64,000 nucleotides of DNA, from positions 62,001 through 126,000 of the IMG/VR virus record IMGVR_UViG_3300008261_000001, one strand, 5' to 3'. Position numbers and translations under genes: made by a program. The notes beneath the pieces were generated by a model. That model saw only the letters and a program-made list of their open reading frames with translations, searched no databases and was not told the DNA's origin. The stretch's first letter is position 1; every line of letters starts with the position of its first letter. Shown in pieces: positions 5,554-62,800 of the stretch.

Positions 5554-5566
5554 GGTTCATCGCCTC

Positions 5567-23939: not shown

Positions 23940-24128
23940 GACTCGAACCTCCAAAAGATTGGATACTTTAAGGGGTGTTCATCATTAAAAGATTATTGTT
24001 TCTTATAGGTGTATGTAGTTCTGCCCCCTCCAGAGTGTTGTTGATGTAGTCCGAGTGTCGATTATCGACCAAGAGGGGGGGGGTTAATACATACAAATAC
24101 TTAGCTTAAAAGAGAAAGGTGGGGTAGT

Positions 24129-34408: not shown

Positions 34409-35016
34409 TAATCACCCTCCTAAGAAAGCCCCTAGAGGGTACTGTAGCTGAGAACGCCTTACAGCATGGCTGTGGGGCTATCAATATAGACGCTACGAGA
34501 GTGTCCACTTCCGATAATCTTAATGGCGGGGCTTATCGTTGTGAAAACCCTACTGATAGTGAATCAGTTTCCTATTCTTTGAGAAAAGGGATAGGTGAGT
34601 ATGAGCAACCGAGTGGGAGGTGGCCAGCTAACTTTATCCTTAACCACCTAGAGGGCTGTGAACTAAAAGGCACTAAGAAAGTTAAAGAGGGTAAAAGTAG
34701 CTCTGCTGTTGGTGGCTCTGACAGAAAAGTAGGTCTTTATAAGGATGGACTTAAGAAAGAAGCGGAAAATCGCTATCGAGGAGAGGAAGAAGTGGCAGAT
34801 TGGGCTTGTGCCGAGGGATGCCCTATTAAGAAATTGGATACTCAGTCTGGGATACTCAAAAGTGGAGCATTGAAACCCGATGCTTATGTTAAAAATGACA
34901 GGGTCAACTCCTCTATGTTTGCAGGAGCAGGTACTTACTCAAATAAGGGATATTCATCTGAGGAGGGTGGAGCGTCTAGGTTCTTCATGCAGTTTAAGAA
35001 AGACCCCGAACAATGA
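34405..35016 (+). CDS. Split beta-class MTase, insert module A2
   Basis: Same conserved blocks as A1 with different variable segments. Confidence 0.8.
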   Translation: MIITLLRKPLEGTVAENALQHGCGAINIDATRVSTSDNLNGGAYRCENPTDSESVSYSLRKGIGEYEQPSGRWPANFILNHLEGCELKGTKKVKEGKSSSAVGGSDRKVGLYKDGLKKEAENRYRGEEEVADWACAEGCPIKKLDTQSGILKSGALKPDAYVKNDRVNSSMFAGAGTYSNKGYSSEEGGASRFFMQFKKDPEQ

Positions 35017-35600
35017 TAGAAATAAAAATCGGAGACTGCGTTGACCGACTTAAAGACCTCGCGGATAACTCTATTGACGCGGTTATTTCTGACCCTCCTT
35101 ATGGTGTTAAGGTATTAGGGAAGGGTTGGGATAATATCGGTGAGGGGATTCAACAACGAGAATGGCATAGAGGTTGGCTCATGGAAGCCTATAGAGCCTT
35201 AAAGCCTAATGGAGTCCTTAAAGCCTTTTCTAGTGCGGTCACTTATCATCACTTATTAGAGGTAATGGGAGAGGTGGGGTTCTCGGACTTGAGCGTAGAG
35301 GCTTGGGTTTATTCAAGCGGTATGCCCGCTGGAAACTTTGATTTGGCGAAGGGGGTTGAGTGTCAGATTCTCTTTGGTGACTCGAACAACAAGCAGTTTA
35401 AGAAACTTAAAGGTAGTCGTAGAGAGGGTAAAACAGGTTTGGGGCAACTCAACTTTTTACACGACTCAAGACCTGAGAACTACAAACAGCATGGGGCGTT
35501 TACGCTCGACCCTCAAACAGAGCAAGGTGCTTTGTGGGCAGGCTGGGGAACAACACTAAAGAAATCTTGGGAACCCATTTGCATTGGAGTTAAGAAATGA
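35013..35600 (+). CDS. Split beta-class MTase, catalytic module B (subtype 2a)
   Basis: DPPYGVKVLGK, SSGMPAGNFDL, WAGWGTTLKKSWEP; no FxGxG. Confidence 0.85.
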   Translation: MIEIKIGDCVDRLKDLADNSIDAVISDPPYGVKVLGKGWDNIGEGIQQREWHRGWLMEAYRALKPNGVLKAFSSAVTYHHLLEVMGEVGFSDLSVEAWVYSSGMPAGNFDLAKGVECQILFGDSNNKQFKKLKGSRREGKTGLGQLNFLHDSRPENYKQHGAFTLDPQTEQGALWAGWGTTLKKSWEPICIGVKK

Positions 35601-36166
35601 TAGAAATAAAAATCGGAGACTGCGTTGATAGGCTTAAAGACCTCGCGGATAACTCCGTTGACGCTATTATTTCTGACCCCCCCTATGGTCTGAAGTTCAT
35701 GGGTAAAGGTTGGGATGATATTGGAGAGGGTGCCGAACAACGAGAGTGGCATAGGGCATGGCTTACTGAAGCCCACCGCGTCTTAAAGCCTAATGGAGTC
35801 CTTAAAGCCTTCTCAGGGACGAGGACTTTCCATCATCTGATAGCGATGATGGAAGAAATAGGTTTCTCAGACTTGAGCGTAGAGGCTTGGGCATATGGGA
35901 GCGGTTTCCCGAAGTCTCACAACCTTGCCAAGCAGTTCGATAAGAAGGCTGGTGTAGAGGGTGAGATAATAGGTCATAAGCCCGGAGTGTCAGTAGAGGA
36001 CTCTCAAGGACATGGGGGCATCGCGAGAGGTGGTGTGGGGATTGTTCAGAAGAACGCGATGATACCCATTAGAGCTTCGGTGACGGATGACGCGAAAGTA
36101 TGGGAGGGATGGGGAACGGCTCTTAAACCAGCTTGGGAGCCCATCTGCATAGGAGTTAAGAAATGA
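35597..36166 (+). CDS. Split beta-class MTase, catalytic module B (subtype 1b)
   Basis: DPPYGLKFMGK, GSGFPKSHN, WEGWGTALKPAWEP; no FxGxG. Confidence 0.85.
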   Translation: MIEIKIGDCVDRLKDLADNSVDAIISDPPYGLKFMGKGWDDIGEGAEQREWHRAWLTEAHRVLKPNGVLKAFSGTRTFHHLIAMMEEIGFSDLSVEAWAYGSGFPKSHNLAKQFDKKAGVEGEIIGHKPGVSVEDSQGHGGIARGGVGIVQKNAMIPIRASVTDDAKVWEGWGTALKPAWEPICIGVKK

Positions 36167-36813
36167 TAATCACTTTGCTCAGAAAGCCCCTAGAGGGTAC
36201 TGTAGCTGAGAACGCCTTACAGCATCGCTGTGGGGCAATCAACATTGACGCTACAAGAGTGTCCACTTCCGATAATCTTAATGGTGGAGCGTATGCAGAA
36301 AACCCTACAGAGCGTGGGGGGGCGGATATGTGGACTTCAACAAGAAAAGGGGATTCTAACTGCTTTAAGCGTGGTGGTGGGGGTGAATATGAGCAACCGA
36401 GTGGCAGATGGCCCGCTAACTTTATCCTTAACCACCTAGAGGGCTGTGAGCTAAAAGGCACTAAGAAAGTTAAAGGGGCGATAAGCAAACCTTCGGAGGG
36501 AAACAAAGCTAAGACTTCTATCTCTATGAACAACTCTAAAGAAGGTATTCATAGGGTTAGTCACGCTGATGAAGATGGGAATGAAGAAGTGGCAGATTGG
36601 GCTTGTGTAGAGGGATGCCCTGTTAAGACCCTCGATGAACAAAGTGGTATTTCTAAAAGTACAGGTGGGCGTATCGGTAATAAGCAAGGAGCTTATGCTC
36701 ATCAGGGGCCGGGGGGGTGGTCAACGGATTATACGAAAGGTGACCCAGGTTTTGGAGATGAGGGTGGTGCTTCTAGGTTCTTTATGCAGTTTAAGAAAGA
36801 CCCCGAACAATGA
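36163..36813 (+). CDS. Split beta-class MTase, insert module A3
   Basis: Conserved A blocks; appears mosaic of A2 (5' part) and A1 (3' part). Confidence 0.8.
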   Translation: MIITLLRKPLEGTVAENALQHRCGAINIDATRVSTSDNLNGGAYAENPTERGGADMWTSTRKGDSNCFKRGGGGEYEQPSGRWPANFILNHLEGCELKGTKKVKGAISKPSEGNKAKTSISMNNSKEGIHRVSHADEDGNEEVADWACVEGCPVKTLDEQSGISKSTGGRIGNKQGAYAHQGPGGWSTDYTKGDPGFGDEGGASRFFMQFKKDPEQ

Positions 36814-37400
36814 TAGAAATAAAAATCGGAGACTGCGTGGATAGGCTCAAAGACCTAGAGGATAACTCCATTGATGCGGTTATTTCTGACCCCCCTTATG
36901 GTGTTAAAGTACTAGGGAAGGGTTGGGATAATATCGGAGAAGGTGCCTTACAGAGAGAGTGGCATAAAGGTTGGGTTCAAGAAGCCTATAGAGTCTTAAA
37001 GCCTAATGGAGTCCTTAAAGCCTTTTCTAGTGCGGTCACTTATCATCACTTATTAGAGGTAATGGGGCAGATGGGCTTCTCAGACTTGAGCGTAGAAGCG
37101 TGGGTTTATTCAAGCGGTATGCCCGCAGGGAACTTCGACTTGGCGAAGGGGGTTGAGTGTCAGCTTCTCTTTGGGGTGTCGAACTCAAAACACTTCCATA
37201 AACTTAAAGGGACAAAGCGAGCAGGGAAGACAGGGATAAACAAGTGGGGGGTAGAGCATGGCTCTCGTCAGGTGGACTCTCAGATAGGGGCTTCCGCCTT
37301 TGACCTAGAGCCACAGACGAAGGAGGGGGAGACATGGATGGGGTGGGGTTCTGTTCTCAAGAAATCTTGGGAGCCTATCTGCATAGGGGTTAAGAAGTGA
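36810..37400 (+). CDS. Split beta-class MTase, catalytic module B (subtype 2b)
   Basis: DPPYGVKVLGK, SSGMPAGNFDL, WMGWGSVLKKSWEP; no FxGxG. Confidence 0.85.
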   Translation: MIEIKIGDCVDRLKDLEDNSIDAVISDPPYGVKVLGKGWDNIGEGALQREWHKGWVQEAYRVLKPNGVLKAFSSAVTYHHLLEVMGQMGFSDLSVEAWVYSSGMPAGNFDLAKGVECQLLFGVSNSKHFHKLKGTKRAGKTGINKWGVEHGSRQVDSQIGASAFDLEPQTKEGETWMGWGSVLKKSWEPICIGVKK

Positions 37401-43828: not shown

Positions 43829-45043
43829 CTATCCATTATTCTCCTCTTTTACCTTAGCTTCATATTCAGCCTGAGCCTGAGCCGCCTCCGCTTCCCATCG
43901 TGCTCCCTCTTCTTGTCTCTTTCTAGCCTCTGCTTCCCAATCTTGTGCTCTGCTTTGTTGGTTCTTTTTACGCCTCTGCTCTTTCTCATACTCTTTCTGT
44001 AGCCTTTTAGCTTCACGCTCCGCCGCCTCTTGAGCTATTTGACGAGCTAGGGCTTCCTCCCTGGCTTTAGCTTCTTCTTCTTCCTTAAGCCTCTTCTGAT
44101 TATTCTCATGTAGGGCTTTATTTTGCTCATCACTAAGGATTTCTAGTGGGTCGCAGTTCACCTCGTCAGACTGACCATAAGGAACAATAGACTTAATAAA
44201 AATCCCCTCAAGTCGCCACTTATGCTCTTTGATTATCTCATTAACTATCCTTCTCCTTAGTTCCGCACTTTGGCTGTTTCTCTCTCTACCCCTAGCGAAG
44301 TTCTCTAATAAAGGTAGCTTCTTAATAGTTATGGTGTTCTCACTACCCTCTTCTTTTAGCTCAATGTCTTTATCCAAGTACTTCTTTAAGTCTGAGTCGT
44401 TCGTGTGGATGTTGGACTCCAAGATAATCAAAATCGTAAGCCCCCCATGCTCTATGGTTATTTTGTTGTAACTCTCTTGGCTAACACCGAAGTATCCTTT
44501 GGAAGTCCACAATGACTTCACTAAAGCCAGTTGCACACTATCTTCATCTTTGAAGAAACTTCCGATTGCCTTAACCACCGTGTCTTCTGAGATACTCCTA
44601 AGATCCATCCTCCATTGTGTATGCCTATTAAACTCCAAAGGTACGACACCTGCCCTACCAAACCTAAAGCTCTCCTCATAGGTTTTGTAAGCCGCATATT
44701 CAATATCTTCGTTATATATGGCTTTTATGCCGTCCTCAGTAATTATTGCTGGGCTGTTATTAAGGGAAGTCACGAGCTTGTTATAATCTTGCCTTTGCCT
44801 ATTCAACAGCCTGTCTAGATGGTCTGGGTGTACACGCATTGCTCGGCTAATCGCCACGCAAGGGCCACCGCTACCTAAGGGGGGGGTTAGGTCGGCTTGT
44901 CTCTCCAACATCGCCACTCTCTGCATAAGACGCTCTATTTGAGCGGCGAGCTTATCTGTAGAGGCAACCCTAGAAATCTTATTCTGAGCCACAAGGGAAG
45001 CTATCTTCCTTTGTGCTACGCGGACAATCATAAATCTATCCAT
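43829..45043 (-). CDS. Hypothetical protein with RVAS/KIAS-rich N-terminus, DUF4258-like segment and charged coiled-coil tail
   Basis: FNRHTQWRMDLRSISEDTV resembles the HAxxRMxxRxI pattern; E/K/R/Q-rich C-terminus. Confidence 0.7.
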   Translation of the reverse strand: MDRFMIVRVAQRKIASLVAQNKISRVASTDKLAAQIERLMQRVAMLERQADLTPPLGSGGPCVAISRAMRVHPDHLDRLLNRQRQDYNKLVTSLNNSPAIITEDGIKAIYNEDIEYAAYKTYEESFRFGRAGVVPLEFNRHTQWRMDLRSISEDTVVKAIGSFFKDEDSVQLALVKSLWTSKGYFGVSQESYNKITIEHGGLTILIILESNIHTNDSDLKKYLDKDIELKEEGSENTITIKKLPLLENFARGRERNSQSAELRRRIVNEIIKEHKWRLEGIFIKSIVPYGQSDEVNCDPLEILSDEQNKALHENNQKRLKEEEEAKAREEALARQIAQEAAEREAKRLQKEYEKEQRRKKNQQSRAQDWEAEARKRQEEGARWEAEAAQAQAEYEAKVKEENNG

Positions 45044-45050
45044 TTTCAGC

Positions 45051-45090
45051 TCCTTCTATGAGTTATCCTAAATGTAACCTCATAAAAGGA
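45051..45090 (-). promoter_or_regulatory. CTTTTATG motif plus RBS-occluding hairpin
   Basis: TCCTTCTATGAGTTA (45051-45065) pairs with TAACCTCATAAAAGGA (45075-45090; one bulge, one wobble), covering AAGGAG. Confidence 0.6.
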
Positions 45091-45129
45091 TAATACACCC
45101 CCCACCAAAGAGCTAGTATCCACCTCCCA

Positions 45130-46116
45130 CTAGAGGTCGAGCTTATCCACCTGCTCTAAATAAGCCAAAGCACACTCCTTTGCTCCGTTGGAAGCCGACA
45201 CGCTCATGACACGCTCACGGAGGGTTAAACTAGACCAACCTGTGGTAGCAACGCTCTTCATTTTCTCTACTATGGTTTCCATACGCTCTTTTGAGTCTTT
45301 GTCCCTTATGGCTTCCTCTACCTTAAAAGCCTCCGTAGCGGGACGACAAGGCACATCGTGTCGAATAATGGATAAATCTGTCTCAGATACGGAAACCTCT
45401 ACAGCACAAGGTGTACGGTCTAGGTCGTCTAGGTGTAAAGACCCTCGTGTCAAAGACCCTACATTTACGACATGAGAGCCATTGGATAACTTGGTGATTC
45501 CTTGATCCTTATGCCAATGACCGAAGAACCAACAATCCACATCGGTTATGCTATCCAATAAATCATAGCCTACGATGTCCTCGTTCTCGAACATAGAGCC
45601 ACCCTCACCTTTGCGGGCTAAAAGATGGCAAGCTACGAATAAGTAGTCCTCTGGACCTTTTTGGATACTTTTGAGCCTCTCGAAGTCGTAGCTTGTGCCA
45701 TGATACGGCACACCGACTATCCTTAATGAAACCCCTGACTTATCCGTAATGAATACCTCTTGGTTGTCTCCGAACTGCTTGAACACACCAGATGAAAACA
45801 AGACGCTCAGTGGTTGCTCAGGTAAATACTCGATGTTTCCGTATTTCACATCGTGATTGCCGACAAGGGCGTAAACGGGACACGGATAGTTGCTGTGAGC
45901 CTCACACGCTTGACGAACAAGGGCATGGGAGTTTCTTGTGGGCGACTTCACATCAAAAAAGTCACCACCATCCAGCACTAGGTCTGCACCCACCTCTTGA
46001 GCGAGCTTCCCTATCCATTTTAGCTTATCCACCACATCGAGCGTCCAATCGCCTGTACGCCTACGAGGGGTTTTATCGGACAGATGGACATCAGTCCGCC
46101 AGATTAGTTTTATCAT
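45130..46116 (-). CDS. SbcD/Mre11-like metallophosphoesterase nuclease
   Basis: TDVH, GGDFFD, GNHD, CH, GHWH and GSL motifs. Confidence 0.88.
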   Translation of the reverse strand: MIKLIWRTDVHLSDKTPRRRTGDWTLDVVDKLKWIGKLAQEVGADLVLDGGDFFDVKSPTRNSHALVRQACEAHSNYPCPVYALVGNHDVKYGNIEYLPEQPLSVLFSSGVFKQFGDNQEVFITDKSGVSLRIVGVPYHGTSYDFERLKSIQKGPEDYLFVACHLLARKGEGGSMFENEDIVGYDLLDSITDVDCWFFGHWHKDQGITKLSNGSHVVNVGSLTRGSLHLDDLDRTPCAVEVSVSETDLSIIRHDVPCRPATEAFKVEEAIRDKDSKERMETIVEKMKSVATTGWSSLTLRERVMSVSASNGAKECALAYLEQVDKLDL

Positions 46117-50296: not shown

Positions 50297-53200
50297 GTGC
50301 TTCATATGCTTTTCCTAAGAAATAAAAACAGATCGGTGGTTCCCTTTAAGGGGGAGCTGTTCAAGATGATAGAGACGAAGTTCTCTAGGATTCCAGTCTT
50401 GAACGCTATGGGTCAGCAGATAGTGGATCCTTCCACCAAGAAGGTCAAGACGACAAAAGCTGAAGAAGTGACGATGCCCTTTTTCGTCTATAACTCTCTT
50501 GTGTCCTTAGACGAGTATGTCATGGGCAAAATGGAGCAACTAGAGGCGGATAAGGATAGGAAAAGGGTTAAGTCAGACTTAACGACTAAGTTCGCTGCGT
50601 CTTGGCGGTTTATACTTCGTAGGTGGACGGTGACCGCCCCCAAAGGCATGAGGGACAACTGCGTTAAGATCGAAAGATTTATCGAAGCACTCGACAACGA
50701 AATGGAAAACCTTATCAACGATAGGAATACCCCCTTCACAGAGAAGGTTAAAGCCATCAAAGATTATGCGAAGAGTACCGAGGGCAAAAAGCTCATGGAG
50801 CTTTACTGCGACTTCATGCGTAATGTGTTTCAGACCTTCGGCATGGTCGTGGCAGTATCCATTAAGGTCAATAACAGAGTCGGTGTAAGATATCTTCAGT
50901 TCAAGCTCGGCTCTCAAGTAGAGGCTATGCTTGAGGAAGCAAGCAACTCTGAAAAGGTTCGTATCGAACGAGCCATGAAGATGACCGAACTTCGTGATCT
51001 CAAGCTCAAAGCCCAAATGGATAACATGGGCTATGTTGTTGAGTCTATGCCCGTCTACGGAGATGGGGATAAACCCATCTTCGCCCTCGTAGCGTACGAC
51101 CCCGCATACAAGCAAATCCCCGTACCCAAAGTCCCCACAAGGGTAAAAGTAAGTGACGAGGAAAAGAAGCTCATTAAAGAGCTTTATCCCAACGAACAAG
51201 GGCTTTATTCAGTACTCCCCCCTAGAGCCACAAAGGAAGACAGGGATAGGCTTTTGGAAAGGATTGAGTTCCTTAAAGAAGAGATTAAGGATCAAATAGG
51301 AAAGTCACAAAAATTCTATCTCCCTGGTTATGGGATAAAACCTGATGGGACACCAGAGAAAACGGATAAAAACGGCAAGCCTATTTACAAGTACATAAAT
51401 ACAGAAACTGAACGCAGAAAAGCCGCTAGAGCCGCTAAAGCACTAGAAAAACTGCAATACAATATGAGCCTTCAGCTCTCTTCCAATGTAACCAAAGAAA
51501 TCAAAGATCAATACAGAAGGGCTATAGAGCCTTACATCAAGGGCATATACCACCCCAACTTCACCACAAACCTCGGCAACGAGTACGAGTACTTCCCCTC
51601 GCTACAAGCCTTAAAGGATAAAATAGCAGTACAACAAGCCTCTAGTACTGCTATTCAAACCGTACTCGTCCCTGAGTTCCAAACACAGAAGGTCAATGTG
51701 CCTAACTATCCTGTTTGGGATGATGTCACGCAGAAGATTAAGTATGAGTCCAAAGATCTCACTGTACCCGTGATAACAATCGGACCAAACAACACCGCAG
51801 TACCCCACTACGCAACAGAGCTTGCTAGTGTGAACTACGAAAAAGACGAAATCGTCACTAGAGAGATCAGGGACTTCGGTGAATCCCAAGTCGTAGGTAG
51901 TGGGATTTCTCGCTCTGTAGAGACAAAGCAGATAGTAGTAAACGGCTCACCAAAGTCTCTCATCGTAAAGGGTCGCTATGCAGGCTATCTCTTAGAACAC
52001 ATCGTTAACCTTGAGGGTAAGTTCATCGAGGGTGGGTACATCAACAAGGTTGGTGGAGATAACAAGACGGTCTCCCTCCTTGAAGACCGCATGATTGTTA
52101 AGGACGGAGTAGTACAGACCATAGACTACTTAGCGGACAATAAGGTACGCCAACGCTTAATCGAGCCTTATGTGACCCTCACAGAAGATGGGCAGTCGCT
52201 CTTGTTGGGTCTCCCTGGATCATCCCCTCGTGGGATAAATCTCGACCATAGCATAATGGATAAACTATCCAAAAAGGTAGCCACTATTGAGAAGGTGATC
52301 AATAAGGATATACCAGAGTCTCACTCATGGCATAGGTCTCGTAACCCTTACTACACCTTCAAGGTTGAAGACTTTGAGCTAGTTCGTAAGAGCCTCGGTT
52401 CTGTTGGTGTGAGCAAGCCAGCCTCCGACTTCATTGACGCTTATTTCAATAAGCTCAAAGCACAAGAGGCGGCGATGGCTGTAGAAAACCTAGAACGCTT
52501 CACCCCAGCGTCTCTAGGTGGCTTCGTTAAGCAAACGGATAGAGGCCCGTTTAGGTTCAACAATAAGCAACTCGAAGCCCTTGCTTGGATCGACTCCGCT
52601 GAAATGAAGGGTGTAGTCGGTCTAGACACAGGTGTAGGAAAGACGGTGACGGCTCTCGCCGCCATCAAGAACGCCATAAACCAAGAGATGTACGAGGGGC
52701 TACCTAAGCGTAAGTTCCTATTCGTATCGCCTGCTCGTCTTGTGGGCAACCTCAAGAAAGAGATAGATGCCTACATGGATGAGGGTGGTGAAGAAGTCAC
52801 TCTCGCTGACGGCACTAAGGATGTGTCTCCAAACTGGCGTAAGATACTCAACGACCGCGTGGTCGAGATGTCTTATGACAAGTACACGGAAACTTTCCAA
52901 GATTTCGGTGGGCAGTTCGCCTCCACAGAAGAGGGTTCTAAGCTACTGGAAGAGTTATCCGTTCTAGAGAGAGAAATACAGCTACAAGGTCGTCCCGTTG
53001 ACCCTAACAACCTAGAGGGCGAAAAGCACCCCACCCTAAGCGATAAGCAACTAGAGGCTAAGAAAAAGCTCATCAAAGAACTCAAGAAGCAAATCCGTCT
53101 GCTTCAAAAGGCACTCGTGGTGGAGAGTTATCCTAAAGCGGATAAGTATTTCCAAAAGGAGTTCTATGCCTGCTTCTTTGACGAGGTGAACGAAGCCCTT

Positions 53201-55882
53201 GTTGGGGATAAGAGGAAAGCCCTCGCCTCTCTCAAGCACCCTCGTAAGGTTTTCCTTACCGCCTCTACCATGCAGAAGGATCCCCTCGACCTTTACAGAT
53301 TCGTTACGCTCGCTAAGGGTGCAGATTACTCAGCGGCAGATGAAGAAGCCTTCGTTAAGAAATACGGAAATGTCGTGGGCGGTCGCTTTGTAGGCATCAA
53401 GAACGACCCTGAGGCTCAGAGAGAGTTCTACACATGGGTCAAGGAAAACGCTTTCTTTGCCTTTAAGGAGAGCGTCAACTATGAGGAGGTTGGCTTACCC
53501 AAGCTACTCCCCAAGACCTCACGCACCTTAACGGTTAAGATGCCACAGGCTGTTCAAAACGCCTATAAGCAAGAGGCTTCTAAAATCAAACGCGAACTCG
53601 CAGCCATGCTCAAGAAGTATCGTGACTTGAGTGCTGAAGAGCTTTCCTCATACAGCGACACCGAGGATGACGACTTCAGAGAGCTTAATCCCTCCGCTGT
53701 GGGTCGTGGCAGAAACCGCACCATGCAGAAGAAGCTACTCCAAGACTACGCTCAGAAGTCTCTTACACCGCTCATTAAGAAGCTCATGAAGCTATCCAAT
53801 AGACCTGAGAGCGTTATCAAGGGAGCTAAAAATGTAAAGGTGGAACAGGCTGTTGCTCTAGCCCTTGAGTACAGAACAACTAAGACCCTTTACTTCACCG
53901 CAGATAACCTCTTAGCTGTAGAGACAGGTAAGAGCATCAGTAAGAAGATGCCTGCAAAAGTCGTAGCTGTGTGCTTACCAGAAGCTATCCGCTTCTATCA
54001 AGCGGGCAAGCTCATCTACACCGTCAACTCAAGGGATAACCTCTCCCTTGAGCAGTTTGAAAAGCTAGATGTGGCTAAGATCATCAAGCGTTCAAACGAA
54101 ATGCCTGAGGGTGAAGAGATGGAGGCTGAGGCTACATGGGCAATGGATATCTCCAAGCAGTACATCAACAACAACCCCCACATCGGGTCTACCGTGTGTA
54201 CTGACGCTTATGCGTTCGGCTTTAACTTCCAAACCTTCACCAAAGTTATCCATTTGGATAGAGGTGCGGGATTCAACTCCGAAGTGATTAAGCAACGCAC
54301 AGCTAGAGCCTATAGAGCGGGACAAGACAAAGAGGTCGAAGAAATCTTCATCGACACCACAATGAGTGAAGCCACAGACTCACCCACCGCTGTGTCTCAG
54401 AATATCCAAGAGGGCGACATAGAGAACCTATCCATTGACGAGCTTCAGGGTCTAGTCGCCATGAAGGATCAAGAGTTCTTTACGGACATTATCCGTAAGA
54501 GCCTCACAATGGATTTAACCGCTGGTGCAGACGCAGTACAAAGAGACTCCTCTAAGGTGGTTAACTTCACCAACGAGATGCTCTCTTCTATTGTGGATCC
54601 TACGCCTCAGAACATCACCGCTCTTGAGGTACAGCTTGACGATTTTGAGAAGAATCCAGTAAATCATGTGTCTCTACCTGCGGATAGATATGCTCGGCTT
54701 AAAGGTAAATATAGTTTTGCTGTAGAGGGTTATCCACCTAAGAATTTAACTCTTATTCAAGCAATAAATACATTCACAAATGTGCCTGTAGAGCGTCTTT
54801 TCGACTCCATTGGGTTGTTCTTTAACAACTCAGACACAGAAAGCACTCAAAAAAGGATAAACATAGAAAAATATATGACTAAGGGATGGCAGATTTCCTA
54901 CCTAACACCCTTTGCCAGAACTACCGCTACAATAAAGTTTACTCAGGATACTGGTGAAGAGTATATTTATGGGGACTACACGGTGGCTGGAGAGTGTGCT
55001 CCAAGCGGTACTGGTATAAGGATAATGATTACCCGTGCCATATCCGCGATGAAGTCTGGTTTGAAGTCCGTGAGGAACACCTCTGCATTAACTGGTGGAC
55101 CGCGTGTGTGGCCGAAGGTTGGAATGAATGGTAAGGTCGATGTAGGTAGTATCGCAAACACTTGGAGATACAAGCATAACGGTTCTGCCGTTGCCGAACA
55201 GGAAGTAGAGTGGATGAAAGATCTTCTTGAAAGCGACAATAGCATCCTCAGGCTTATTGCTTCAGAGAGAAATCCTGGAGACAAGTTAGGTGAGCGTATG
55301 TGGTCTGCGGGAGCCCACGCTTTCAGCGGAAAAATAGACCTCACTCCAGGGAGTCTATCTCTACAGGTGCTGAACGGATACATTAAAAAGAAGTGTGAGC
55401 AGTTAGGCATAAGCGTACAAGATTACCTCACCGCACCACTAGAGCCTTTCGATCTCGAATCTGTGGATTGCTGGCGTAACCTAGCTAATGGGACTAAGTT
55501 CACTTATGAGGGGAAGGAAATAACCCTTGAGGAAGCAGCCTCGTTATTCCCCACAGAGTTCAAGATTGCCCTTAGGAGTAGTTCAATCCTTAGGGAAGTT
55601 TTGAAGTATTCCAAGCCAGAACTTTTGTCCAAGTATTTCCGCACACCTGTAGAACCCACGGTAGGGAGAACAGCCTCTCCTAGTCACAAGTACTCTTCTG
55701 AACAGCAAGAGGGTGTGGAAATGGATAGCATCCTTAAAGGCATGATGAATGACCCCATATTGGATAGTGTATGGGACGCTATTCGTAGGCAACACTCTAT
55801 CATCTCTATGGAGATAGACCTAGAGATAGACAGAGGCGACACCGACCTCTCACTCGTTGAGAAACTCAAAGGAGCTAACTGA
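50297..55882 (+). CDS. Large SNF2-like (SF2) ATPase with long accessory regions and a C-terminal GNAT-like segment
   Basis: LDTGVGKT (I), FFDEVN (II), LTAS (III), GFNFQ (V) and QRTARAYRAGQ (VI); the start may be ATG 50306 or 50366. Confidence 0.8.
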   Translation: MLHMLFLRNKNRSVVPFKGELFKMIETKFSRIPVLNAMGQQIVDPSTKKVKTTKAEEVTMPFFVYNSLVSLDEYVMGKMEQLEADKDRKRVKSDLTTKFAASWRFILRRWTVTAPKGMRDNCVKIERFIEALDNEMENLINDRNTPFTEKVKAIKDYAKSTEGKKLMELYCDFMRNVFQTFGMVVAVSIKVNNRVGVRYLQFKLGSQVEAMLEEASNSEKVRIERAMKMTELRDLKLKAQMDNMGYVVESMPVYGDGDKPIFALVAYDPAYKQIPVPKVPTRVKVSDEEKKLIKELYPNEQGLYSVLPPRATKEDRDRLLERIEFLKEEIKDQIGKSQKFYLPGYGIKPDGTPEKTDKNGKPIYKYINTETERRKAARAAKALEKLQYNMSLQLSSNVTKEIKDQYRRAIEPYIKGIYHPNFTTNLGNEYEYFPSLQALKDKIAVQQASSTAIQTVLVPEFQTQKVNVPNYPVWDDVTQKIKYESKDLTVPVITIGPNNTAVPHYATELASVNYEKDEIVTREIRDFGESQVVGSGISRSVETKQIVVNGSPKSLIVKGRYAGYLLEHIVNLEGKFIEGGYINKVGGDNKTVSLLEDRMIVKDGVVQTIDYLADNKVRQRLIEPYVTLTEDGQSLLLGLPGSSPRGINLDHSIMDKLSKKVATIEKVINKDIPESHSWHRSRNPYYTFKVEDFELVRKSLGSVGVSKPASDFIDAYFNKLKAQEAAMAVENLERFTPASLGGFVKQTDRGPFRFNNKQLEALAWIDSAEMKGVVGLDTGVGKTVTALAAIKNAINQEMYEGLPKRKFLFVSPARLVGNLKKEIDAYMDEGGEEVTLADGTKDVSPNWRKILNDRVVEMSYDKYTETFQDFGGQFASTEEGSKLLEELSVLEREIQLQGRPVDPNNLEGEKHPTLSDKQLEAKKKLIKELKKQIRLLQKALVVESYPKADKYFQKEFYACFFDEVNEALVGDKRKALASLKHPRKVFLTASTMQKDPLDLYRFVTLAKGADYSAADEEAFVKKYGNVVGGRFVGIKNDPEAQREFYTWVKENAFFAFKESVNYEEVGLPKLLPKTSRTLTVKMPQAVQNAYKQEASKIKRELAAMLKKYRDLSAEELSSYSDTEDDDFRELNPSAVGRGRNRTMQKKLLQDYAQKSLTPLIKKLMKLSNRPESVIKGAKNVKVEQAVALALEYRTTKTLYFTADNLLAVETGKSISKKMPAKVVAVCLPEAIRFYQAGKLIYTVNSRDNLSLEQFEKLDVAKIIKRSNEMPEGEEMEAEATWAMDISKQYINNNPHIGSTVCTDAYAFGFNFQTFTKVIHLDRGAGFNSEVIKQRTARAYRAGQDKEVEEIFIDTTMSEATDSPTAVSQNIQEGDIENLSIDELQGLVAMKDQEFFTDIIRKSLTMDLTAGADAVQRDSSKVVNFTNEMLSSIVDPTPQNITALEVQLDDFEKNPVNHVSLPADRYARLKGKYSFAVEGYPPKNLTLIQAINTFTNVPVERLFDSIGLFFNNSDTESTQKRINIEKYMTKGWQISYLTPFARTTATIKFTQDTGEEYIYGDYTVAGECAPSGTGIRIMITRAISAMKSGLKSVRNTSALTGGPRVWPKVGMNGKVDVGSIANTWRYKHNGSAVAEQEVEWMKDLLESDNSILRLIASERNPGDKLGERMWSAGAHAFSGKIDLTPGSLSLQVLNGYIKKKCEQLGISVQDYLTAPLEPFDLESVDCWRNLANGTKFTYEGKEITLEEAASLFPTEFKIALRSSSILREVLKYSKPELLSKYFRTPVEPTVGRTASPSHKYSSEQQEGVEMDSILKGMMNDPILDSVWDAIRRQHSIISMEIDLEIDRGDTDLSLVEKLKGAN

Positions 55883-57898: not shown

Positions 57899-57940
57899 AG
57901 TGGGTTATCCTATCTGTTTAAGGATAACCCACTATAAAAG
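57897..57940 (-). promoter_or_regulatory. CTTTTATA motif plus a perfect 15-bp hairpin occluding the RBS and start codon
   Basis: ATAGTGGGTTATCCT (57897-57911) / AGGATAACCCACTAT (57921-57935); the minus-strand 3' arm includes AGGA and the AT of ATG. Confidence 0.7.
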
Positions 57941-57976
57941 ACTTACACAAGATAAGGGGTGTTGATCAAAAGCTAA

Positions 57977-58306
57977 TCAGCCCTCGCTATTGCCCTTAAT
58001 GAGATAAGTGAAGTTTCCTTTAATCTTCTTGATAGAGGCTTCCATCTGAGCTTGTGTGATAAGACCACCTGCGGCAGCTTGCTCGTGAGCGAGTACATTT
58101 ACATCCAAGCCCAACAGATGGGTTGCAACACGCACATCTGCATGGTCTAGACCCTCAGTCAAGTCATCAGGGGTTCCGTAGTTTGCAGTAAGAGAGACAA
58201 ACACATCACCACCACCGCGTGGGAGCTTCACAACACGGCTTACCATAATCTGAGTCACTTTGGTGTTCGACCTTATACGACTCACTTGTGCTTTCAAATC
58301 GCTCAT
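57977..58306 (-). CDS. Hypothetical protein
   Basis: 109 aa; GAGG RBS upstream. Confidence 0.65.
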   Translation of the reverse strand: MSDLKAQVSRIRSNTKVTQIMVSRVVKLPRGGGDVFVSLTANYGTPDDLTEGLDHADVRVATHLLGLDVNVLAHEQAAAGGLITQAQMEASIKKIKGNFTYLIKGNSEG

Positions 58307-58373
58307 ATAAAACCTCGTTTAAGTGCGGTAACTTACACCCCTTTATATAGGAAAGGGGGTTTAGAACACCGCC

Positions 58374-58796
58374 TTATTTACGGATTTTTCTCATGCGAGC
58401 GTTGATCTTGTTGAACACCGCCTCTACATCCTCGATAGCCTCGATAGACTCTTCCAAAATGGATAACGCCTTACCCAAGTCACCGCCAGGTAAATCGAGG
58501 TGGTTCATGAGGTTGTTCTGAAGGATACGAGCCTCAGCCCTAAGGGGGTTAGCCTCGTCCTCGTCAAAAGAAACCTCCTCGTCTTCGTCCAACTGAGATT
58601 GAATAGAACCAACCTCTTTCAGTACAGCCTTAAACTCCGACTTAACGGACTCTACTGCCTTCTTTAGACCACCGAGGTCGAGCTTCACATCCTTATCATC
58701 TGCGGCGATACGGCTAGAGAAATCATTACGACCCTCTAGGCGGGCTAAACGGGACTCAAGTTCACGGACTACTTCACTTGCTAGACGAGTTCTCAT
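58374..58796 (-). CDS. Coiled-coil protein with an MRTRLASEV..RLARLE leader
   Basis: ATG 58796 after AAGGA (preferred over track start 58865). Confidence 0.7.
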   Translation of the reverse strand: MRTRLASEVVRELESRLARLEGRNDFSSRIAADDKDVKLDLGGLKKAVESVKSEFKAVLKEVGSIQSQLDEDEEVSFDEDEANPLRAEARILQNNLMNHLDLPGGDLGKALSILEESIEAIEDVEAVFNKINARMRKIRK

Positions 58797-58919
58797 AGCT
58801 GTCTTATCCTTTGTAAGTGGGGTGAAAAACACATGGGCAACAAAATATAAACGAATAAAAATCATCCCAACCCTGGTTATCCATTATTAGTGAGGAGAAC
58901 CAACAGCTAGGAGAGCTAA

Positions 58920-59186
58920 ATGAACAAGTACGATAACAAGATCACCCAATGGCTCTTTGAGAGCCCCGCCAATAACTTCAACCTCACCCTCAGCGAGCTA
59001 ACCGCCCTCAATGACCACCTCAAGGGGATTGACCTCGACAGCCTTGAGATTGAGATGCCCCAAGCCTCTGTCTCTACCAAGAGACTCTTAAACGCCCTCA
59101 AAGGCGATTTTGGAAGGTCGGTCAAGTTTAAGGCTTTTGAGTATCTGATGGCTACCTGCCCTAACTTCGCTCAGTATTGGGACTGA
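58920..59186 (+). CDS. Hypothetical protein
   Basis: TAGGAG RBS; 88 aa; isolated on the + strand. Confidence 0.6.
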   Translation: MNKYDNKITQWLFESPANNFNLTLSELTALNDHLKGIDLDSLEIEMPQASVSTKRLLNALKGDFGRSVKFKAFEYLMATCPNFAQYWD

Positions 59187-59207
59187 AGAGGAGCTAGGGG
59201 GGTAGGG

Positions 59208-59822
59208 TCACTCAGAGTAAACGATCTCGCTCTCCACAGAGACTAAGAGAGACACCACTAGGGTATTCCTCTCTTTCTTAGCGGAGAGGTTCACCACCTC
59301 TAGTTCGGTCGTTATGTCTTGGATATCCAATCCACGAACCTCGTAGTTGAGTTCGAGCTTGGTGGCTTCTATGAGGTCTTGCTCTACGCTAGAGAGCTTA
59401 GACTTCACAACCGAGAACAAAGTTTTGGATAGATCTTCATAGCCCATGCCACCGAGTACTAGGGGTGTGCCTAGTACTCTTTCGAAATCACTTCCATCAT
59501 AGACATAGGTGAGAACCATCGAGCCACCTACTACCACTTGATCTGGATAAGGGATAAGCTCAGTCTCTCGTTCTGCTCTGTTGTATCGCTCGATAGAGGC
59601 GTAGCCCTTTTTGGCTTTAAAGTTCGAAGAACCATCTAGGTTAGAACCGAATCCTTGAAGGATTACATTTAGGACTTGATTAGCGACTTTATCGTCTCCC
59701 TCTGTTTGAGGGAAAACAGCATGGACAGGCTTTAGGTCTAAAGCCGCCCTACGAGTCATTCCGCTTTCGAGGCGGGCGACTCTCACCTCTAGACTTCTCA
59801 ATACTTCACTTGCTGTTCTCAT
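59208..59822 (-). CDS. Hypothetical protein with an MRTASEV..RVARLE leader
   Basis: 204 aa; leader shared with 58374-58796. Confidence 0.75.
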   Translation of the reverse strand: MRTASEVLRSLEVRVARLESGMTRRAALDLKPVHAVFPQTEGDDKVANQVLNVILQGFGSNLDGSSNFKAKKGYASIERYNRAERETELIPYPDQVVVGGSMVLTYVYDGSDFERVLGTPLVLGGMGYEDLSKTLFSVVKSKLSSVEQDLIEATKLELNYEVRGLDIQDITTELEVVNLSAKKERNTLVVSLLVSVESEIVYSE

Positions 59823-59871
59823 TTATAACCCCTTAGGTGAATCTTATTGTATCCACCTAAGGGGTTATAAA
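59822..59871 (-). promoter_or_regulatory. CTTTATAA motif plus a perfect 18-bp hairpin occluding the RBS
   Basis: TTTATAACCCCTTAGGTG (59822-59839) / CACCTAAGGGGTTATAAA (59854-59871); the stem ends at the A of ATG. Confidence 0.72.
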
Positions 59872-59883
59872 GAGACTATAAAC

Positions 59884-62800
59884 TCAGTTAGACCTAAGGA
59901 ACTCCCGCATAGCTTCCATAAAGCTAACGCTTGCAGTACGAGTATCGAGGGAGATCTCGGGTTGGATACAAGCCTCAGAGATGAAGGGGGAAGGACCGCC
60001 CTTACCCTTATTCCCACGGTCTGAGGGGTTTCTGTCAGGACCATAAAGAATCTTAACGCGGTCTTGCCCACGAGTGATAGCCACATAAGCAAGCCTACGC
60101 TCAGACTCTATATCAGAGCGAGGGTCTGGGAAGTATCCATTTGTCATAGGGAGGTACATATCCCTACACTCAAGACCTTTCCAAGCGTGCATGGTGCCGA
60201 GGAACACAGAGTTCTTATTTCGACCACCCTCTTCGTTGGACTTATCCGCCATCGTCTTCGACTGTTTCTTTAGCTCAAAGAAGAAGGTCAACCCATCTTC
60301 GAGGGTTCGTTTCTCGAACACACGATGGACTACGCGGGTTCCAGACTCAGCGTACTGAGCCATATCATCCAGAGTGACCTCGCCTGACTCGGTCTCTCTG
60401 GATAGATCGTCGATCTCGGCAGCGGACAAGTTTTCACCCGTGCGTTCCAAGAGGTTCTTACCATCTAGACCACGGATATTACGGCACACAAAGTCTATCA
60501 GTTCTGAGTTAGTCCCTTCGAAGTCCATAATAGACTTCAAAGCATCCGCATACGCCTTAGCATTGGACAATCTCTTGGTTTGGCTTGAAGGATAGAGCGA
60601 CCTCCAACCGCCATTCACCAAGAAATCTAAGGGGTGTTGCCCAGCGTGTCTTGCTTGCTCATCTAGGCTGGCATTGAACTGAGAGTCGATGTAAAACAAC
60701 AAGTGCTTGTGAGCCATCTTAACGGCTTCAAGTTTGTACACTGGATTGTTTGAACGAACCGACATCAAGTGAACAGGTGCAAGCATTGTGGCTGTGTTCA
60801 TTAAGTCTCTCTTACAGAAGTAAGGAACTCCAGCTACCAATAACTCAAACGCATATCCAGTCAGTTCTGCGTTTGTACGGCAACCAATACCGAACTTGTG
60901 TTGCTCACCATTTTGGTGAGACCAACCCTCAATCTCAATAATCTCAGAGATCTCCTTAGCCACCTCTACAGCACCAGGTGATTGGGGTGTCGATGTATTG
61001 ATGTGATCCTCTGAGGTAATCCGACCCTCTTCTTTTGTGGGTGTAGGATTACAAACCATAGGGATTTGTTTGGTGTTATGGGCGATGAGTTTATTAGCCG
61101 CTTGGACGATGTTGCGACCTGATCTAAAGTTTGTCCTTAAAACAGATGTCTTGAACTCACCATTGTAAGCGTCTGAGATGTTGATGAACTCCTCGGGTTG
61201 AGCACCTCTAAACTCGTAAATGGCTTGCTTGTCGTCACCAATGAAGCAGTATGTGTCTGCCGTCATACGACCATCACCATATGGCTGTAAGGTCTCGGGA
61301 TTAATATGACCTGCAATAAGACCGAACAGAGTGTGTTGTGCCTTATTTAAGTCTTGTGCCTCGTCTACGAAGATGTACTTGTAAGCCGCCTGCATGGAGC
61401 GGAGCTTAGACGGATTCTCTACAAGGGATTTATTCGCCCACACCAAAAGGTCGTCATAATCAGCGAGCTTCTCCCTTGTCTTAAAGTACATATAAGCACC
61501 ATAAACTGCCGCTACCGCTCCACCATTGCCCCCAGACCAAAGCTCGGTGGGTGACACCATATCCGCCATGTAGATACCGATCTCCTTCATGTAATCGGAT
61601 ACCTTCTGGTCTTTAGAGAGGACATCTTCCCTCTCGTAGCCAATGTTAAACCACTGCCCTACAGGCTCAGGTTTACCAAAGGGAGGGAAAGAGGCGAACT
61701 TACCCGTAAAGCCAGGAAATGGACCAGCCTTTTGGATAGAGTTCTGCCCACGATTTGTGGTGATGAGAGCATTAACTGTATCCCTAAAACCCCTATCGTC
61801 CCAAATGGGACTGCTCGGAGGTAAGAATGTGATGTTCCCTCTGTTGTCGATGTTTTGGATAGATGGACGAATCTTATCCAAATCACCTCTACCCCACGAC
61901 ATATTGTTATTTATAGCCCAAATCGCCTTCTCACCGATTACGCGGGCGGTCTCAATAAGAAGTCTCTTTAGCTCGTCCACTTGTTGTGTGTTTCCAGCCG
62001 CTTGATCCACTTGTACGCTCATAGACTGAAGTGGAGCGGCGGCGAGGGCGAGGTTAATGAAAGGTCTAACAAGTGGAGGGGTATTACTAGCAGGGTGATA
62101 AAGCATAACCTGCTCTATAGCCGCCTTCATCCACGCCTCTGCCTTAGACTCTGACATTAGCTCCACACCCCTAAGAAAACCAGAATCGGTACAAATCTTA
62201 TGGGAGATAGAGTGTGTCGTAGAGCCAATAAAACGACCAGAATCCGATGCTCCATTCGAGTACTTAGATGCCCTAGACTTCAACTCGTTAGAAGCCTCCT
62301 TGCCGAAGGTCGTGGCGATTATCTGATCAGGGCTGGCACCTAACTCGTTAATGGTGTAGGCGATCTTAGATGCCAACACACGAGTCTTACCAGAACCTGC
62401 ACCCGCAGCAATAATCGACTTACCCGTCACCATCATCGCTTCCTCTTGCTCTGGAGTGAGCCTTTGGATCTCTCCAGTTCGAGTTTGGAAACTTGTGTTG
62501 GTGTTGATTACACGACCCGCCTCTGCCAACAAAGCCTGCCTGTCTTCCGAACCTTTCGTCATATCCAAGAGCTTGTCGTACAAAACCTCGCGGTTTTGAA
62601 GCATCTTGATCTGCTCCCCTTCAGGCAAACCACCCGCCCTGATCCTCGCATCTAAGCTCTTAATCTCCCCCGCCAGCTTCGCTACCTCCCTTATGTCCCT
62701 AAGGCTTTGCTCCACAGGGTTCGCTTGCTCCAATAGAGCACACGCATCAGCTATCCATTTCCCTATCGACTGTGCCTTGCTCGCCCTCTCGACTAAGAGT

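What the first reader, a model, noticed from the sequence alone, without database searches (positions are those of the whole stretch)
58374..59822. Shared N-terminal leader of about 20 aa on two otherwise unrelated proteins
Seen: MRTRLASEVVRELESRLARLEG (58796) versus MRTASEVLRSLEVRVARLES (59822), followed by dissimilar bodies. A looser version, RVASTDKLAAQIERLMQRVAMLE, occurs in 43829-45043. Established: T4 internal proteins share a 10-aa capsid targeting sequence. Inference: a portable amphipathic-helix tag that docks cargo onto the prohead scaffold.
Basis: partly seen in the sequence, partly recalled or inferred. Interest (0 to 1): 0.62.

Follow-up and report, generated by a model that had tools for sequence, protein, structure and literature searches.

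The report
Shared N-terminal leader on jumbo-phage proteins
A freshwater jumbo phage puts the same 20-residue helical leader on at least 16 otherwise unrelated small proteins, and its relatives do so on hundreds more; this is most likely an address tag that loads them into the phage head, though no experiment has tested that.

Summary
The window is part of a 290-kb jumbo phage related to Bacillus phage G.

- **In this genome:** the leader MRTASEVLRSLEARIARLE starts 15 ORFs. A truncated form starts a 16th, and one copy sits at the C-terminal end of another ORF. Apart from one tandem pair, the protein bodies show no similarity to each other.
- **Selection is on the peptide:** invariant residues are encoded by many different codons.
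- **Elsewhere:** a profile search finds 852 protein clusters carrying the leader. Of the best 149 hits, 139 have it at the extreme N-terminus. Their 135 bodies fall into 122 unrelated groups, with essentially no known domains.
- **It is an add-on:** the body of one tagged protein occurs without any leader in a relative and in its phage protein family.
- **Other lineages use other leaders:** relatives with about 90% identical capsid protein carry a different leader or shorter variants.
- **Link to the head:** four of the 16 genes lie in the head module, next to the portal and capsid genes.
- **Possible processing site:** the half-motif RVARLE-RQA recurs between domains in some proteins.

The best reading is a capsid-targeting propeptide like those of T4 and P1. 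Targeting and cleavage are inferred, not shown.

The parts
59208..59822 (-). Gene B, 204 aa: 20-aa leader, a short linker that the model leaves unstructured, and a body with no known relatives
   Evidence: ORF. No Pfam, PHROG or NCBIfam match. Only three homologues were found, and all keep the leader. The AF2 model is poor (pLDDT 56); it places a helix at residues 4-19 and a low-confidence stretch at 20-33.
59763..59822 (-). Leader of gene B: MRTASEVLRSLEVRVARLES
   Evidence: profile score 40-46 bits, E about 1e-13.
58374..58796 (-). Gene A, 140 aa from the ATG at 58796: leader plus an acidic, helical-looking body
   Evidence: No significant family match: none in Pfam or PHROGs, and only sub-threshold coiled-coil hits in NCBIfam. 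No BLASTP similarity to B outside the leader.
58731..58796 (-). Leader of gene A: MRTRLASEVVRELESRLARLEG, a variant with a two-residue insertion after MRT
   Evidence: profile score 31-36 bits, E about 2e-9.
59825..59882 (-). Upstream of gene B: two TTTATA boxes (59877-59882 and 59866-59871) and a perfect 21-bp RNA hairpin that ends 2 nt before the ATG
   Evidence: Hairpin energy -31.7 kcal/mol, z -8.6. The box-plus-hairpin layout recurs before many genes of this phage, leader-bearing or not.
58846..58851 (-). TTTATA box 50-55 nt upstream of the start of gene A; no hairpin here
44891..44923 (-). QRVAMLERQAD inside ORF 43829-45043 (residues 41-51 of 404): a borderline match to the C-terminal half of the leader
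   Evidence: 4.5-6.4 bits, E 0.11-0.53 in this genome's proteome. It resembles the internal half-motifs seen in some metagenomic members, such as RVASLERQAD in P0054. Not accepted as a member.

Best explanation
The leader is a portable N-terminal address tag of about 20-24 residues. The consensus across phages is M-R-(R)-T-A-S-E-V-L-R-S-L-E-x-R-[VIL]-A-R-L-E followed by [R/G/K]-[Q/R/K]-[A/T/S]. A clade of freshwater jumbo phages related to phage G attaches it to a large, fast-turning-over set of small proteins of unknown function. It most likely works like the capsid-targeting sequence of the T4 internal proteins or the N-terminal packaging signal of P1 DarB. The amphipathic helix would dock the newly made protein to a lineage-specific part of the prohead interior (the scaffold, the tail of the protease, or the core). 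The invariant ...R-V-A-R-L-E end, with its conserved downstream residues, would then be cut by the prohead protease. The freed cargo would stay in the head and enter the host with the DNA. Shown: the tag exists, is modular, is under strong selection at the peptide level, nearly always sits at the N-terminus, varies by lineage, and is enriched in the head module. Inferred: docking to the prohead, cleavage after the final Glu, and co-injection.
For: (1) Scale and modularity. There are 17 copies in the genome. Bodies are unrelated except the tandem pair at genome positions 149811 and 150466. Across metagenomes there are 852 clusters; 139 of the best 149 carry the leader at the extreme N-terminus, and 135 bodies fall into 122 BLAST groups.
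(2) Selection acts on the peptide. Invariant Ala, Leu, Arg and Glu are encoded by 2-4 codons each. Ser switches between AGY and TCN, Leu between CTN and TTA, and Arg between AGR and CGN. Of the codon pairs that differ, 790 are synonymous and 414 are not.
(3) The leader is an add-on. The body of the gene at 160297 matches phrog_9437 positions 3-97 of 98 starting at its own residue 33. Its LR745208 homologue starts directly at the body.
(4) Head-module context. The gene order is terminase, portal, two leader genes, 206-aa gene, 1062-aa gene, protease, scaffold-like gene, decoration gene, capsid gene, two leader genes. In 13 of 41 relatives' head loci, leader genes were found, mostly within about 2 kb after the capsid gene.
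(5) Lineage-specific leaders. LR745208 and G009 (capsid protein 90-91% identical, protease 44-46%, scaffold 36-40%) have no copy of this leader but 11 and 8 copies of a different one, MTTLRSKLIRLAHENPALRPQLLPLLKEA. G006 and G008 use shortened variants such as MISQKLASLEARIAKLE. This fits co-evolution with a diverged receptor rather than with the nearly invariant capsid protein.
(6) Two-part structure. The C-terminal half plus downstream residues (R[VI]ARLE[RKG][QK][AS]) recurs alone between domains in five or so metagenomic members (P0005, P0013, P0028, P0054, P0141). It is also the part conserved in the distant variants. A processing site would behave this way.
(7) Precedent. The T4 targeting sequence is removed by the head protease (PMC7697877). 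The first 30 residues of P1 DarB are enough to package a reporter, and the P1 capsid protein is cut after Glu120 (PMC9024508). The SPN3US protease cuts after A-x-E and removes 20-24-residue N-terminal propeptides from two of its substrates (PMC10052503).
(8) The leader is absent from 185,579 bacterial and archaeal genomes, so it appears phage-specific.
Against: There is no direct evidence that any leader protein is in a virion or is cleaved. Twelve of the 16 genes lie outside the structural modules, next to a UvrD helicase, a ligase, homing endonucleases and methyltransferase-like genes. T4 internal-protein genes are also scattered (from memory), so this is weak evidence. The RVARLE motif does not occur in the scaffold-like protein, protease, portal or capsid protein of this phage, although such proteins are usually protease substrates. 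The residue three positions before the putative cut is Arg or Lys, not the Leu/Ile of T4 or the Ala/Ser/Gly of phiKZ and SPN3US. The protease could not be placed in the Glu-specific T4 gp21 family: PF03420 is absent, there is no PDB sequence match, and the AF2 model is unusable. One copy sits at the C-terminal end of an ORF. Cargo charge does not differ from the rest of the proteome. The complex prediction gave no answer.
Confidence: 0.5

Rival explanations
1. The leader is a docking peptide for a hub that has nothing to do with the capsid interior. The hub could be a phage or host protein such as a chaperone, a polymerase, a clamp-like factor or a protease adaptor, or an external virion structure. 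This would resemble the short clamp-binding tails shared by unrelated T4 proteins.
For: Most leader genes lie among DNA-metabolism genes and each has its own upstream TTTATA box and hairpin. The bodies are of unknown function, with no virion annotation. The leader motif is missing from the known head proteins. The window already shows a different shared N-terminus on lectin-type fibre proteins, so shared anchors for external parts do exist in this phage.
Against: Four genes lie inside the head module, and leader genes sit right after the capsid gene in several relatives. Internal half-motifs look more like processing sites than docking sites. Host-hub motifs would not be expected to be swapped wholesale between phages that share about 90% identical capsids.
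Confidence: 0.25
2. The leader is only a short coiled-coil oligomerisation module that lets these small proteins form homo- or hetero-oligomers, with no targeting role.
For: The heptad-like spacing of V7, L8, L11, I15 and L18 with flanking Arg/Glu pairs. AF2 models residues 4-19 as a helix, at low confidence.
Against: A generic coiled coil would not need near-identity across more than 120 unrelated proteins (A, L, R and E are 100% conserved in 143 sequences). It would not need a strict N-terminal position (139 of 149), nor a lineage-wide swap to a different, proline-containing leader.
Confidence: 0.12
3. The conserved element acts at the nucleic-acid level, as a translation-initiation region, a regulatory RNA or a recombination site, and the peptide similarity is a by-product.
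For: The upstream regions also share features: a TTTATA box and a hairpin that includes the ribosome-binding site.
Against: Leader codons vary freely at synonymous sites, including switches between six-fold codon families, while the amino acids stay fixed. The upstream box and hairpin also precede many genes without the leader (47 of 322 genes). Gene A has the leader but no hairpin.
Confidence: 0.03
4. Genes A and B, and the other leader genes, are ordinary diverged paralogues whose N-termini happen to be the best-conserved part.
For: One tandem pair (genome 149811 and 150466) is truly paralogous, with 39% body identity.
Against: No other pair of bodies matches (best E 0.022). Body lengths range from 87 to 352 aa. 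One body belongs to a family that lacks the leader. There are 122 unrelated groups among 135 metagenomic bodies.
Confidence: 0.03

Closest known systems
T4 capsid-targeting sequence of the internal proteins IPI, IPII and IPIII (Mullaney & Black 1996, as cited in PMC7697877 and PMC9024508)
   Same: A short N-terminal peptide shared by otherwise unrelated small proteins. It ends in a Glu that could be a head-protease site. The cargo genes are scattered, fast-evolving and of unknown function.
   Different: There is no apparent sequence similarity to the T4 peptide (judged from memory of its sequence, not aligned here). This leader is about 20 residues rather than about 10. It marks 16-17 proteins per genome rather than a handful. 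No T4-type gp21 protease (PF03420) or gp23 capsid protein (PF07068) is present. The residue three positions before the putative cut is Arg, not Leu/Ile. Packaging and cleavage are untested here.
P1 DarB N-terminal packaging signal (PMC9024508)
   Same: An N-terminal stretch of up to 30 residues directs a protein into the head of a myovirus. The cargo there is an anti-restriction protein delivered with the DNA.
   Different: In P1 the signal is defined on one protein, with no shared consensus among the Dar proteins. Here a nearly identical peptide is reused on many proteins and across many phages.
N-terminal propeptides of phiKZ/SPN3US-type giant-phage head proteins (PMC10052503, PMC5694885)
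   Same: These are jumbo phages with many packaged ejection proteins. Their propeptides are removed after Glu (A-x-E), and two of them are only 20-24 residues long.
   Different: Those propeptides are protein-specific or shared only among paralogues, and mostly 111-254 residues long. No single conserved leader is reported on unrelated proteins.
Encapsulin cargo-loading peptides and microcompartment encapsulation peptides (PMC8346489 for encapsulins; microcompartment peptides from memory)
   Same: A short amphipathic helix plus flexible linker fused to diverse cargo directs it into a protein shell; for encapsulins the shell has the same HK97 fold as phage capsids.
   Different: Those are cellular systems with metabolic cargo, and the encapsulin peptides are usually C-terminal. 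This leader is absent from 185,579 cellular genomes.

Membership tests
T4-type capsid-targeting sequence or propeptide | A short N-terminal peptide shared by proteins that are otherwise unrelated | tested here: met
T4-type capsid-targeting sequence or propeptide | The peptide ends at a site matching the prohead protease motif (T4: Leu/Ile-x-Glu, then the cut) | tested here: inconclusive
   The final Leu-Glu is invariant, and a second x-Leu-Glu lies seven residues earlier. However, the residue three positions before the cut is Arg/Lys, and there are no cleavage data.
T4-type capsid-targeting sequence or propeptide | A gp21-family protease (Peptidase_S77) and a gp23-family capsid protein in the same genome | tested here: not met
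   PF03420 and PF07068 give no match in the genome. The protease here is phrog_18299 and the capsid protein is phrog_2522, the phage G type.
T4-type capsid-targeting sequence or propeptide | The peptide is sufficient to package a foreign protein and is removed in the head | not testable with these tools
   Needs an expression and packaging assay. The complex prediction gave no answer.
P1 DarB-type packaging signal | Cargo is detected in purified virions, and this depends on the N-terminus | not testable with these tools
   The phage is uncultured and no proteome is available.
Encapsulin or microcompartment encapsulation peptide | An amphipathic helix followed by a flexible linker | tested here: inconclusive
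   AF2 places a helix at residues 4-19 and a low-confidence stretch at 20-33, but pLDDT is 30-37 there. Heptad spacing is visible in the alignment.
Encapsulin or microcompartment encapsulation peptide | Encoded in cellular genomes beside a shell operon | tested here: not met
   The degenerate pattern gives 0 hits in 185,579 genomes. All contexts found are phage contigs.
Ordinary paralogue family | Similarity along the full length of the proteins | tested here: not met
Double-glycine leader of bacteriocin type | The leader ends in Gly-Gly (or Gly-Ala) at the cut site, and the cargo is a short peptide | tested here: not met
   Only 2 of 16 leaders are followed directly by Gly-Gly (a third has Gln-Gly-Gly). 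The residue after the final Glu is mostly Arg, Gly or Lys, and cargo is 87-352 aa.

The most novel reading that the evidence does not exclude
Phage-G-like jumbo phages run a generalised 'zip-code' loading system. Interchangeable leader families (the RTASEVLRSLExRVARLE type, the TLRSKLIRLAHENPALRPQLLPLLKEA type and short ISQKLASLEARIAKLE variants) each co-evolve with their lineage's prohead core and protease. Each addresses dozens of rapidly exchanged effector proteins per genome into the head for co-injection. The leader would then be a sequence handle that defines the injected proteome of uncultured huge phages directly from metagenomes.
Probability: 0.4. Interest if true: 0.85.

Novelty: new variant of a known kind. 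Interest (0 to 1): 0.7.

Why it matters
If the leader is a capsid-loading signal, several things follow. It gives a purely sequence-based way to list the packaged, probably injected, proteins of uncultured jumbo phages: 852 protein clusters so far, almost all with no known function. That is a rich pool of candidate anti-defence or host-takeover effectors. It would extend the T4 and P1 targeting-sequence principle from a few proteins to a genome-wide system with lineage-specific address codes. It would also offer a compact tag of about 24 residues for loading foreign proteins into very large capsids. Even if the receptor is not the prohead, a 20-residue peptide kept nearly invariant on more than 120 unrelated proteins points to an unknown, central hub in these phages.

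Tried and rejected
**Attempts that gave no usable result**
- Complex prediction of the 517-aa scaffold-like protein with the first 45 residues of the leader protein at genome position 149811: no answer (score 0.00, controls not run). This is not evidence either way.
- AF2 of gene B with 3 sequences: pLDDT 56, too poor for a fold search. The Atlas look-alikes (DUF7941 at 0.85; tail-completion-like fold at TM 0.43) are leads only.
- AF2 of the protease domain with 14 sequences: pLDDT 36, unusable.
- PDB sequence and profile searches with the protease: nothing. The protease could therefore not be tied to the Glu-specific gp21 family.
- Pfam, PHROG and NCBIfam scans of all 16 cargo proteins and of 147 metagenomic representatives: essentially nothing.
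- tblastn of a 34-aa leader against GenBank phages: no match. The complete lack of hits even at E<=10 suggests the search is insensitive for so short a query.
A degenerate DNA pattern was used instead and gave 0 hits.
- Cargo isoelectric point compared with the proteome: no difference.
- Head-module gene content compared between lineages using different leaders: everything tracks phylogeny, so no single candidate receptor emerged.
- Reads: contigs from two metatranscriptome libraries cover parts of genes A and B, but this does not prove transcription.

**Ideas rejected**
- Nucleic-acid-level element: rejected because of the synonymous variation.
- Simple paralogy: rejected.
- Double-glycine leader: rejected.
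- The third copy in ORF 43829-45043 as a member: not significant.

No alternative genetic code was used.

Full report
**1. The observation**

On the minus strand of the window, gene B (59208-59822, 204 aa) begins MRTASEVLRSLEVRVARLES. Gene A begins MRTRLASEVVRELESRLARLEG at the ATG at 58796. The longest ORF for A runs up to 58865. However, a TTTATA box (58846-58851) and an AAGGA ribosome-binding site point to 58796 as the start, giving 140 aa. After the leader the two bodies show no BLASTP similarity even at E<=10. Neither matches Pfam, PHROGs or NCBIfam.

**2. What the window belongs to**

The window is bases 62001-126000 of a 290,179-bp IMG/VR virus record with CheckV completeness 93%. Its head module lies outside the window at G000 145.9-160.7 kb. 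The gene order there is:
- large terminase subunit, portal
- two leader genes
- a 206-aa and a 1062-aa protein
- prohead protease (phrog_18299)
- an acidic 517-aa scaffold-like protein
- a decoration-like protein
- a 292-aa major capsid protein (phrog_2522)
- two more leader genes

The nearest deposited relatives are the uncultured 485-kb phage LR745208.1 (capsid protein 90% identical), Tunturiibacter phage Tunturi_5, Bacillus phage G and the cluster C mycobacteriophages. The phage is common in freshwater metagenomes, being found in at least 13 independent studies.

**3. The leader is a genome-wide feature**

A profile of the leader finds 17 places in the genome:
- 15 ORFs start with the full leader: M at G000 21576, 22022, 120796 (gene A), 121822 (gene B), 149811, 150466, 159875, 160297, 172012, 212878, 214384, 219745, 224901, 229684 and 278452.
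- One ORF starts with a truncated leader: MNHRLQALEMRVARLE at 215877.
- One copy lies at the very C-terminal end of ORF 45006-45497.

The bodies are 87-352 aa long. By BLASTP they are mutually unrelated, except the tandem pair 149811/150466, which shares 39% body identity against 100% leader identity. An all-against-all comparison of N-termini shows this is the only leader family with unrelated bodies in the genome. The other N-terminal groups are ordinary paralogues.

**4. Peptide, not nucleotide**

Across 16 copies the invariant residues are spelled with many codons:
- Ala: GCA, GCC, GCT, GCG
- Leu: CTT, CTC, CTA, TTA
- Arg: AGA, AGG, CGC, CGT
- Ser: AGC, AGT, TCN

Among codon pairs that differ, 790 are synonymous and 414 are non-synonymous. 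Selection therefore acts on the peptide.

The upstream DNA also looks alike, but this is a general feature of the phage's genes rather than of the leader. A TTTATA box lies 30-100 nt upstream of 47 of 322 genes, against about 6 expected by chance. This includes 11 of the 16 leader genes, but also the UvrD helicase, a giant fibre gene and a head-module gene. Long perfect hairpins run from that box to a few bases before the ATG and include the GGAG ribosome-binding site. Their sequences differ completely between genes. Gene A has the leader but no hairpin.

**5. Portability**

The body of the gene at 160297 matches phrog_9437 over positions 3-97 of 98, beginning at its own residue 33. Its homologue in LR745208 starts directly with the body and has no leader.

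A profile of 26 leaders was searched against 1.84 billion cluster representatives and gave 852 hits at E<=1e-3. Of the best 149:
- two are unrelated repeat proteins (false positives);
- 139 carry the leader within the first 30 residues;
- 135 bodies of at least 50 aa fall into 122 single-linkage BLAST groups;
- median protein length is 140 aa.

Hardly any has a Pfam or annotated PHROG domain.

The consensus across these proteins is (M)RRTASEVLRSLEMRVARLE followed by [R/G/K][Q/R/K][A/T/S][A/S]. Counting back from the final Glu as position 0, Ala at -15, Leu at -8, Arg at -5 and Glu at 0 are conserved in 143 of 143 sequences. Fragmentary relatives hold 3-12 copies per contig. A degenerate pattern for the leader has no match in 185,579 bacterial and archaeal genomes.

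**6. Lineage-specific leaders**

| Genome | Capsid protein identity | Protease identity | Leader found |
|---|---|---|---|
| LR745208 | 90% | 44% | None of this leader; 11 genes start with MTTLRSKLIRLAHENPALRPQLLPLLKEA[A/G], bodies mutually unrelated |
| G009 | 91% | 46% | 8 copies of that second leader, none of the first |
| G007 | 98% | 60% | 12 copies of the first, 3 weak matches to the second |
| G006, G008 | 96%, 94% | 67%, 48% | Shortened N-terminal variants (MRHLTASQKIAHLESRIARLEKKA, MISQKLASLEARIAKLEQSS) that keep only the LExR[IVL]A[RK]LE core |

This genome itself has weak copies of the second leader. One is a 103-aa protein with the motif at both ends.

Across this clade the capsid protein is 88-99% identical. 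The portal is 66-94%, the protease 44-82% and the scaffold-like protein 30-78% identical. A leader that is uniform within a genome but is swapped between lineages with almost the same capsid protein suggests a receptor among the diverged head parts. However, every head protein's identity to ours falls off in step across the relatives, so no single partner could be singled out.

**7. A two-part leader?**

In five or so metagenomic members a second, internal copy of only the C-terminal half plus its downstream residues separates two domains. Examples are ...FRVARLEKQSGS... in P0013...SRVARLERQAKT... in P0028 and ...LRVASLERQADT... in P0054. The same half is what survives in the distant variants. 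This is how a processing site would behave. By contrast, the N-terminal half (RTASEVLRS) is specific to the terminal position. Cleavage after Glu is the rule for the T4, phiKZ and SPN3US head proteases, and the P1 capsid protein is cut after Glu120 (PMC10052503, PMC9024508).

This remains an inference, for three reasons:
- The residue three positions before the putative cut is Arg/Lys here.
- The motif is absent from the scaffold-like protein, protease, portal and capsid protein.
- The protease could not be assigned to the gp21 family.

**8. Best explanation and rivals**

I favour a capsid-targeting propeptide of the T4 internal-protein or P1 DarB kind (PMC7697877, PMC9024508), with confidence about 0.5. 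It fits the modularity, the strict N-terminal position, the conserved Glu boundary followed by a polar, basic linker, and the placement of four genes in the head module. It also fits the leader genes found just after the capsid gene in relatives and the unknown, fast-changing nature of the cargo.

Against it:
- Twelve of the 16 genes lie among DNA-metabolism genes.
- There is no proteomic evidence.
- Cargo charge is unremarkable.
- One copy is C-terminal.
- The only complex prediction returned no answer.

The main rival is a docking peptide for some other hub (about 0.25). A plain oligomerisation coiled coil comes next (about 0.12). A nucleic-acid-level element and simple paralogy are effectively excluded.

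**9. The third copy**

The stretch RVASTDKLAAQIERLMQRVAMLERQAD (ORF 43829-45043, residues 25-51) is the top-scoring non-member in the proteome. It reaches only 4.5-6.4 bits, E 0.11-0.53. Its RVAMLERQAD resembles the internal half-motifs, so it may be a degenerate relative. I do not count it as a member.

**10. Novelty**

Targeting peptides for phage heads are known from T4 and P1. New here are:
- the sequence itself;
- its reuse on 16-17 proteins per genome and on 852 protein clusters;
- its near-invariance across unrelated cargo;
- the existence of alternative leader families in sister lineages.

Text searches of the held literature found no description of this. I rate it a new variant of a known kind, conditional on the targeting function being confirmed.

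Read laying was given 2,101 letters. Only genetic code 11 was used.

Noticed in passing
window 2511-6259 (-), with the 2658-aa ORF at window 8749-16725 (-): Three proteins (194, 458 and 230 aa) share the N-terminus MIIRxLxGxxSD but carry different lectin-type bodies (PA14, Laminin_G_3). The neighbouring 2658-aa protein starts with an Mtd_N tail-fibre domain. This looks like a second, conventional case of a shared N-terminal anchor on variable receptor-binding modules.
   Followed up: partly
window 33213-37400 (+): A tandem array of alternating paralogues: three copies of a protein of about 205 aa, interleaved with four copies of an N6/N4 DNA methyltransferase-like protein of about 193 aa. Their N-termini are almost identical.
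   Followed up: partly
window 59825-59882 (-); also G000 149745-149810, 212879-212935 and many others: Very stable perfect hairpins of 13-21 bp (-27 to -38 kcal/mol, z -7 to -12) span the whole 5' leader, from a TTTATA box to 2-9 nt before the ATG, and bury the GGAG ribosome-binding site. The stems differ in sequence between genes. TTTATA lies 30-100 nt upstream of 47 of 322 genes, against about 6 expected. The role is unresolved: 5' stabiliser, translational control or RNase III site.
   Followed up: partly
G000 158531-159409, compared with L054 and L066-L106: The major capsid protein is 88-99% identical across relatives whose portal (66-94%), protease (44-82%) and scaffold-like protein (30-78%) have diverged much further.
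   Followed up: partly
LR745208.1 (L054:10716-11120, L054:18343-19398 and 9 more); G009; G000 283647-283958 and 198183-199253: A second shared N-terminal leader, MTTLRSKLIRLAHENPALRPQLLPLLKEA, sits on 11 unrelated proteins of LR745208 and 8 of G009. In the window's own genome a 103-aa protein carries a weak version of it at both its N- and C-terminus.
   Followed up: partly
G000 45006-45497 (-): A full leader-like peptide (RRSASDVLRSLETRIARLEARRR, then stop) sits at the C-terminal end of a 163-aa ORF. It is either a C-terminal tag or the remnant of a leader gene that lost its body.
   Followed up: no
G000 217753-219745 and 276904-278452: Twice, a 406-aa paralogue (phrog_12517, with a weak methyltransferase-like match) lies convergent with and directly adjacent to a leader gene whose leader is followed by Gly-Gly-Arg. 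Homing endonucleases lie nearby at 219846-222913.
   Followed up: no
window 50297-55882 (+) and 16812-23954 (-): An 1861-aa protein with SNF2/helicase motifs, and a 2380-aa ORF with no family match.
   Followed up: no
window 57900-60000: Contigs from two freshwater metatranscriptome libraries cover parts of gene A (58486-58800) and the 5' part of gene B (59596-59819). This hints at expression but does not prove it, because DNA carry-over is possible.
   Followed up: partly
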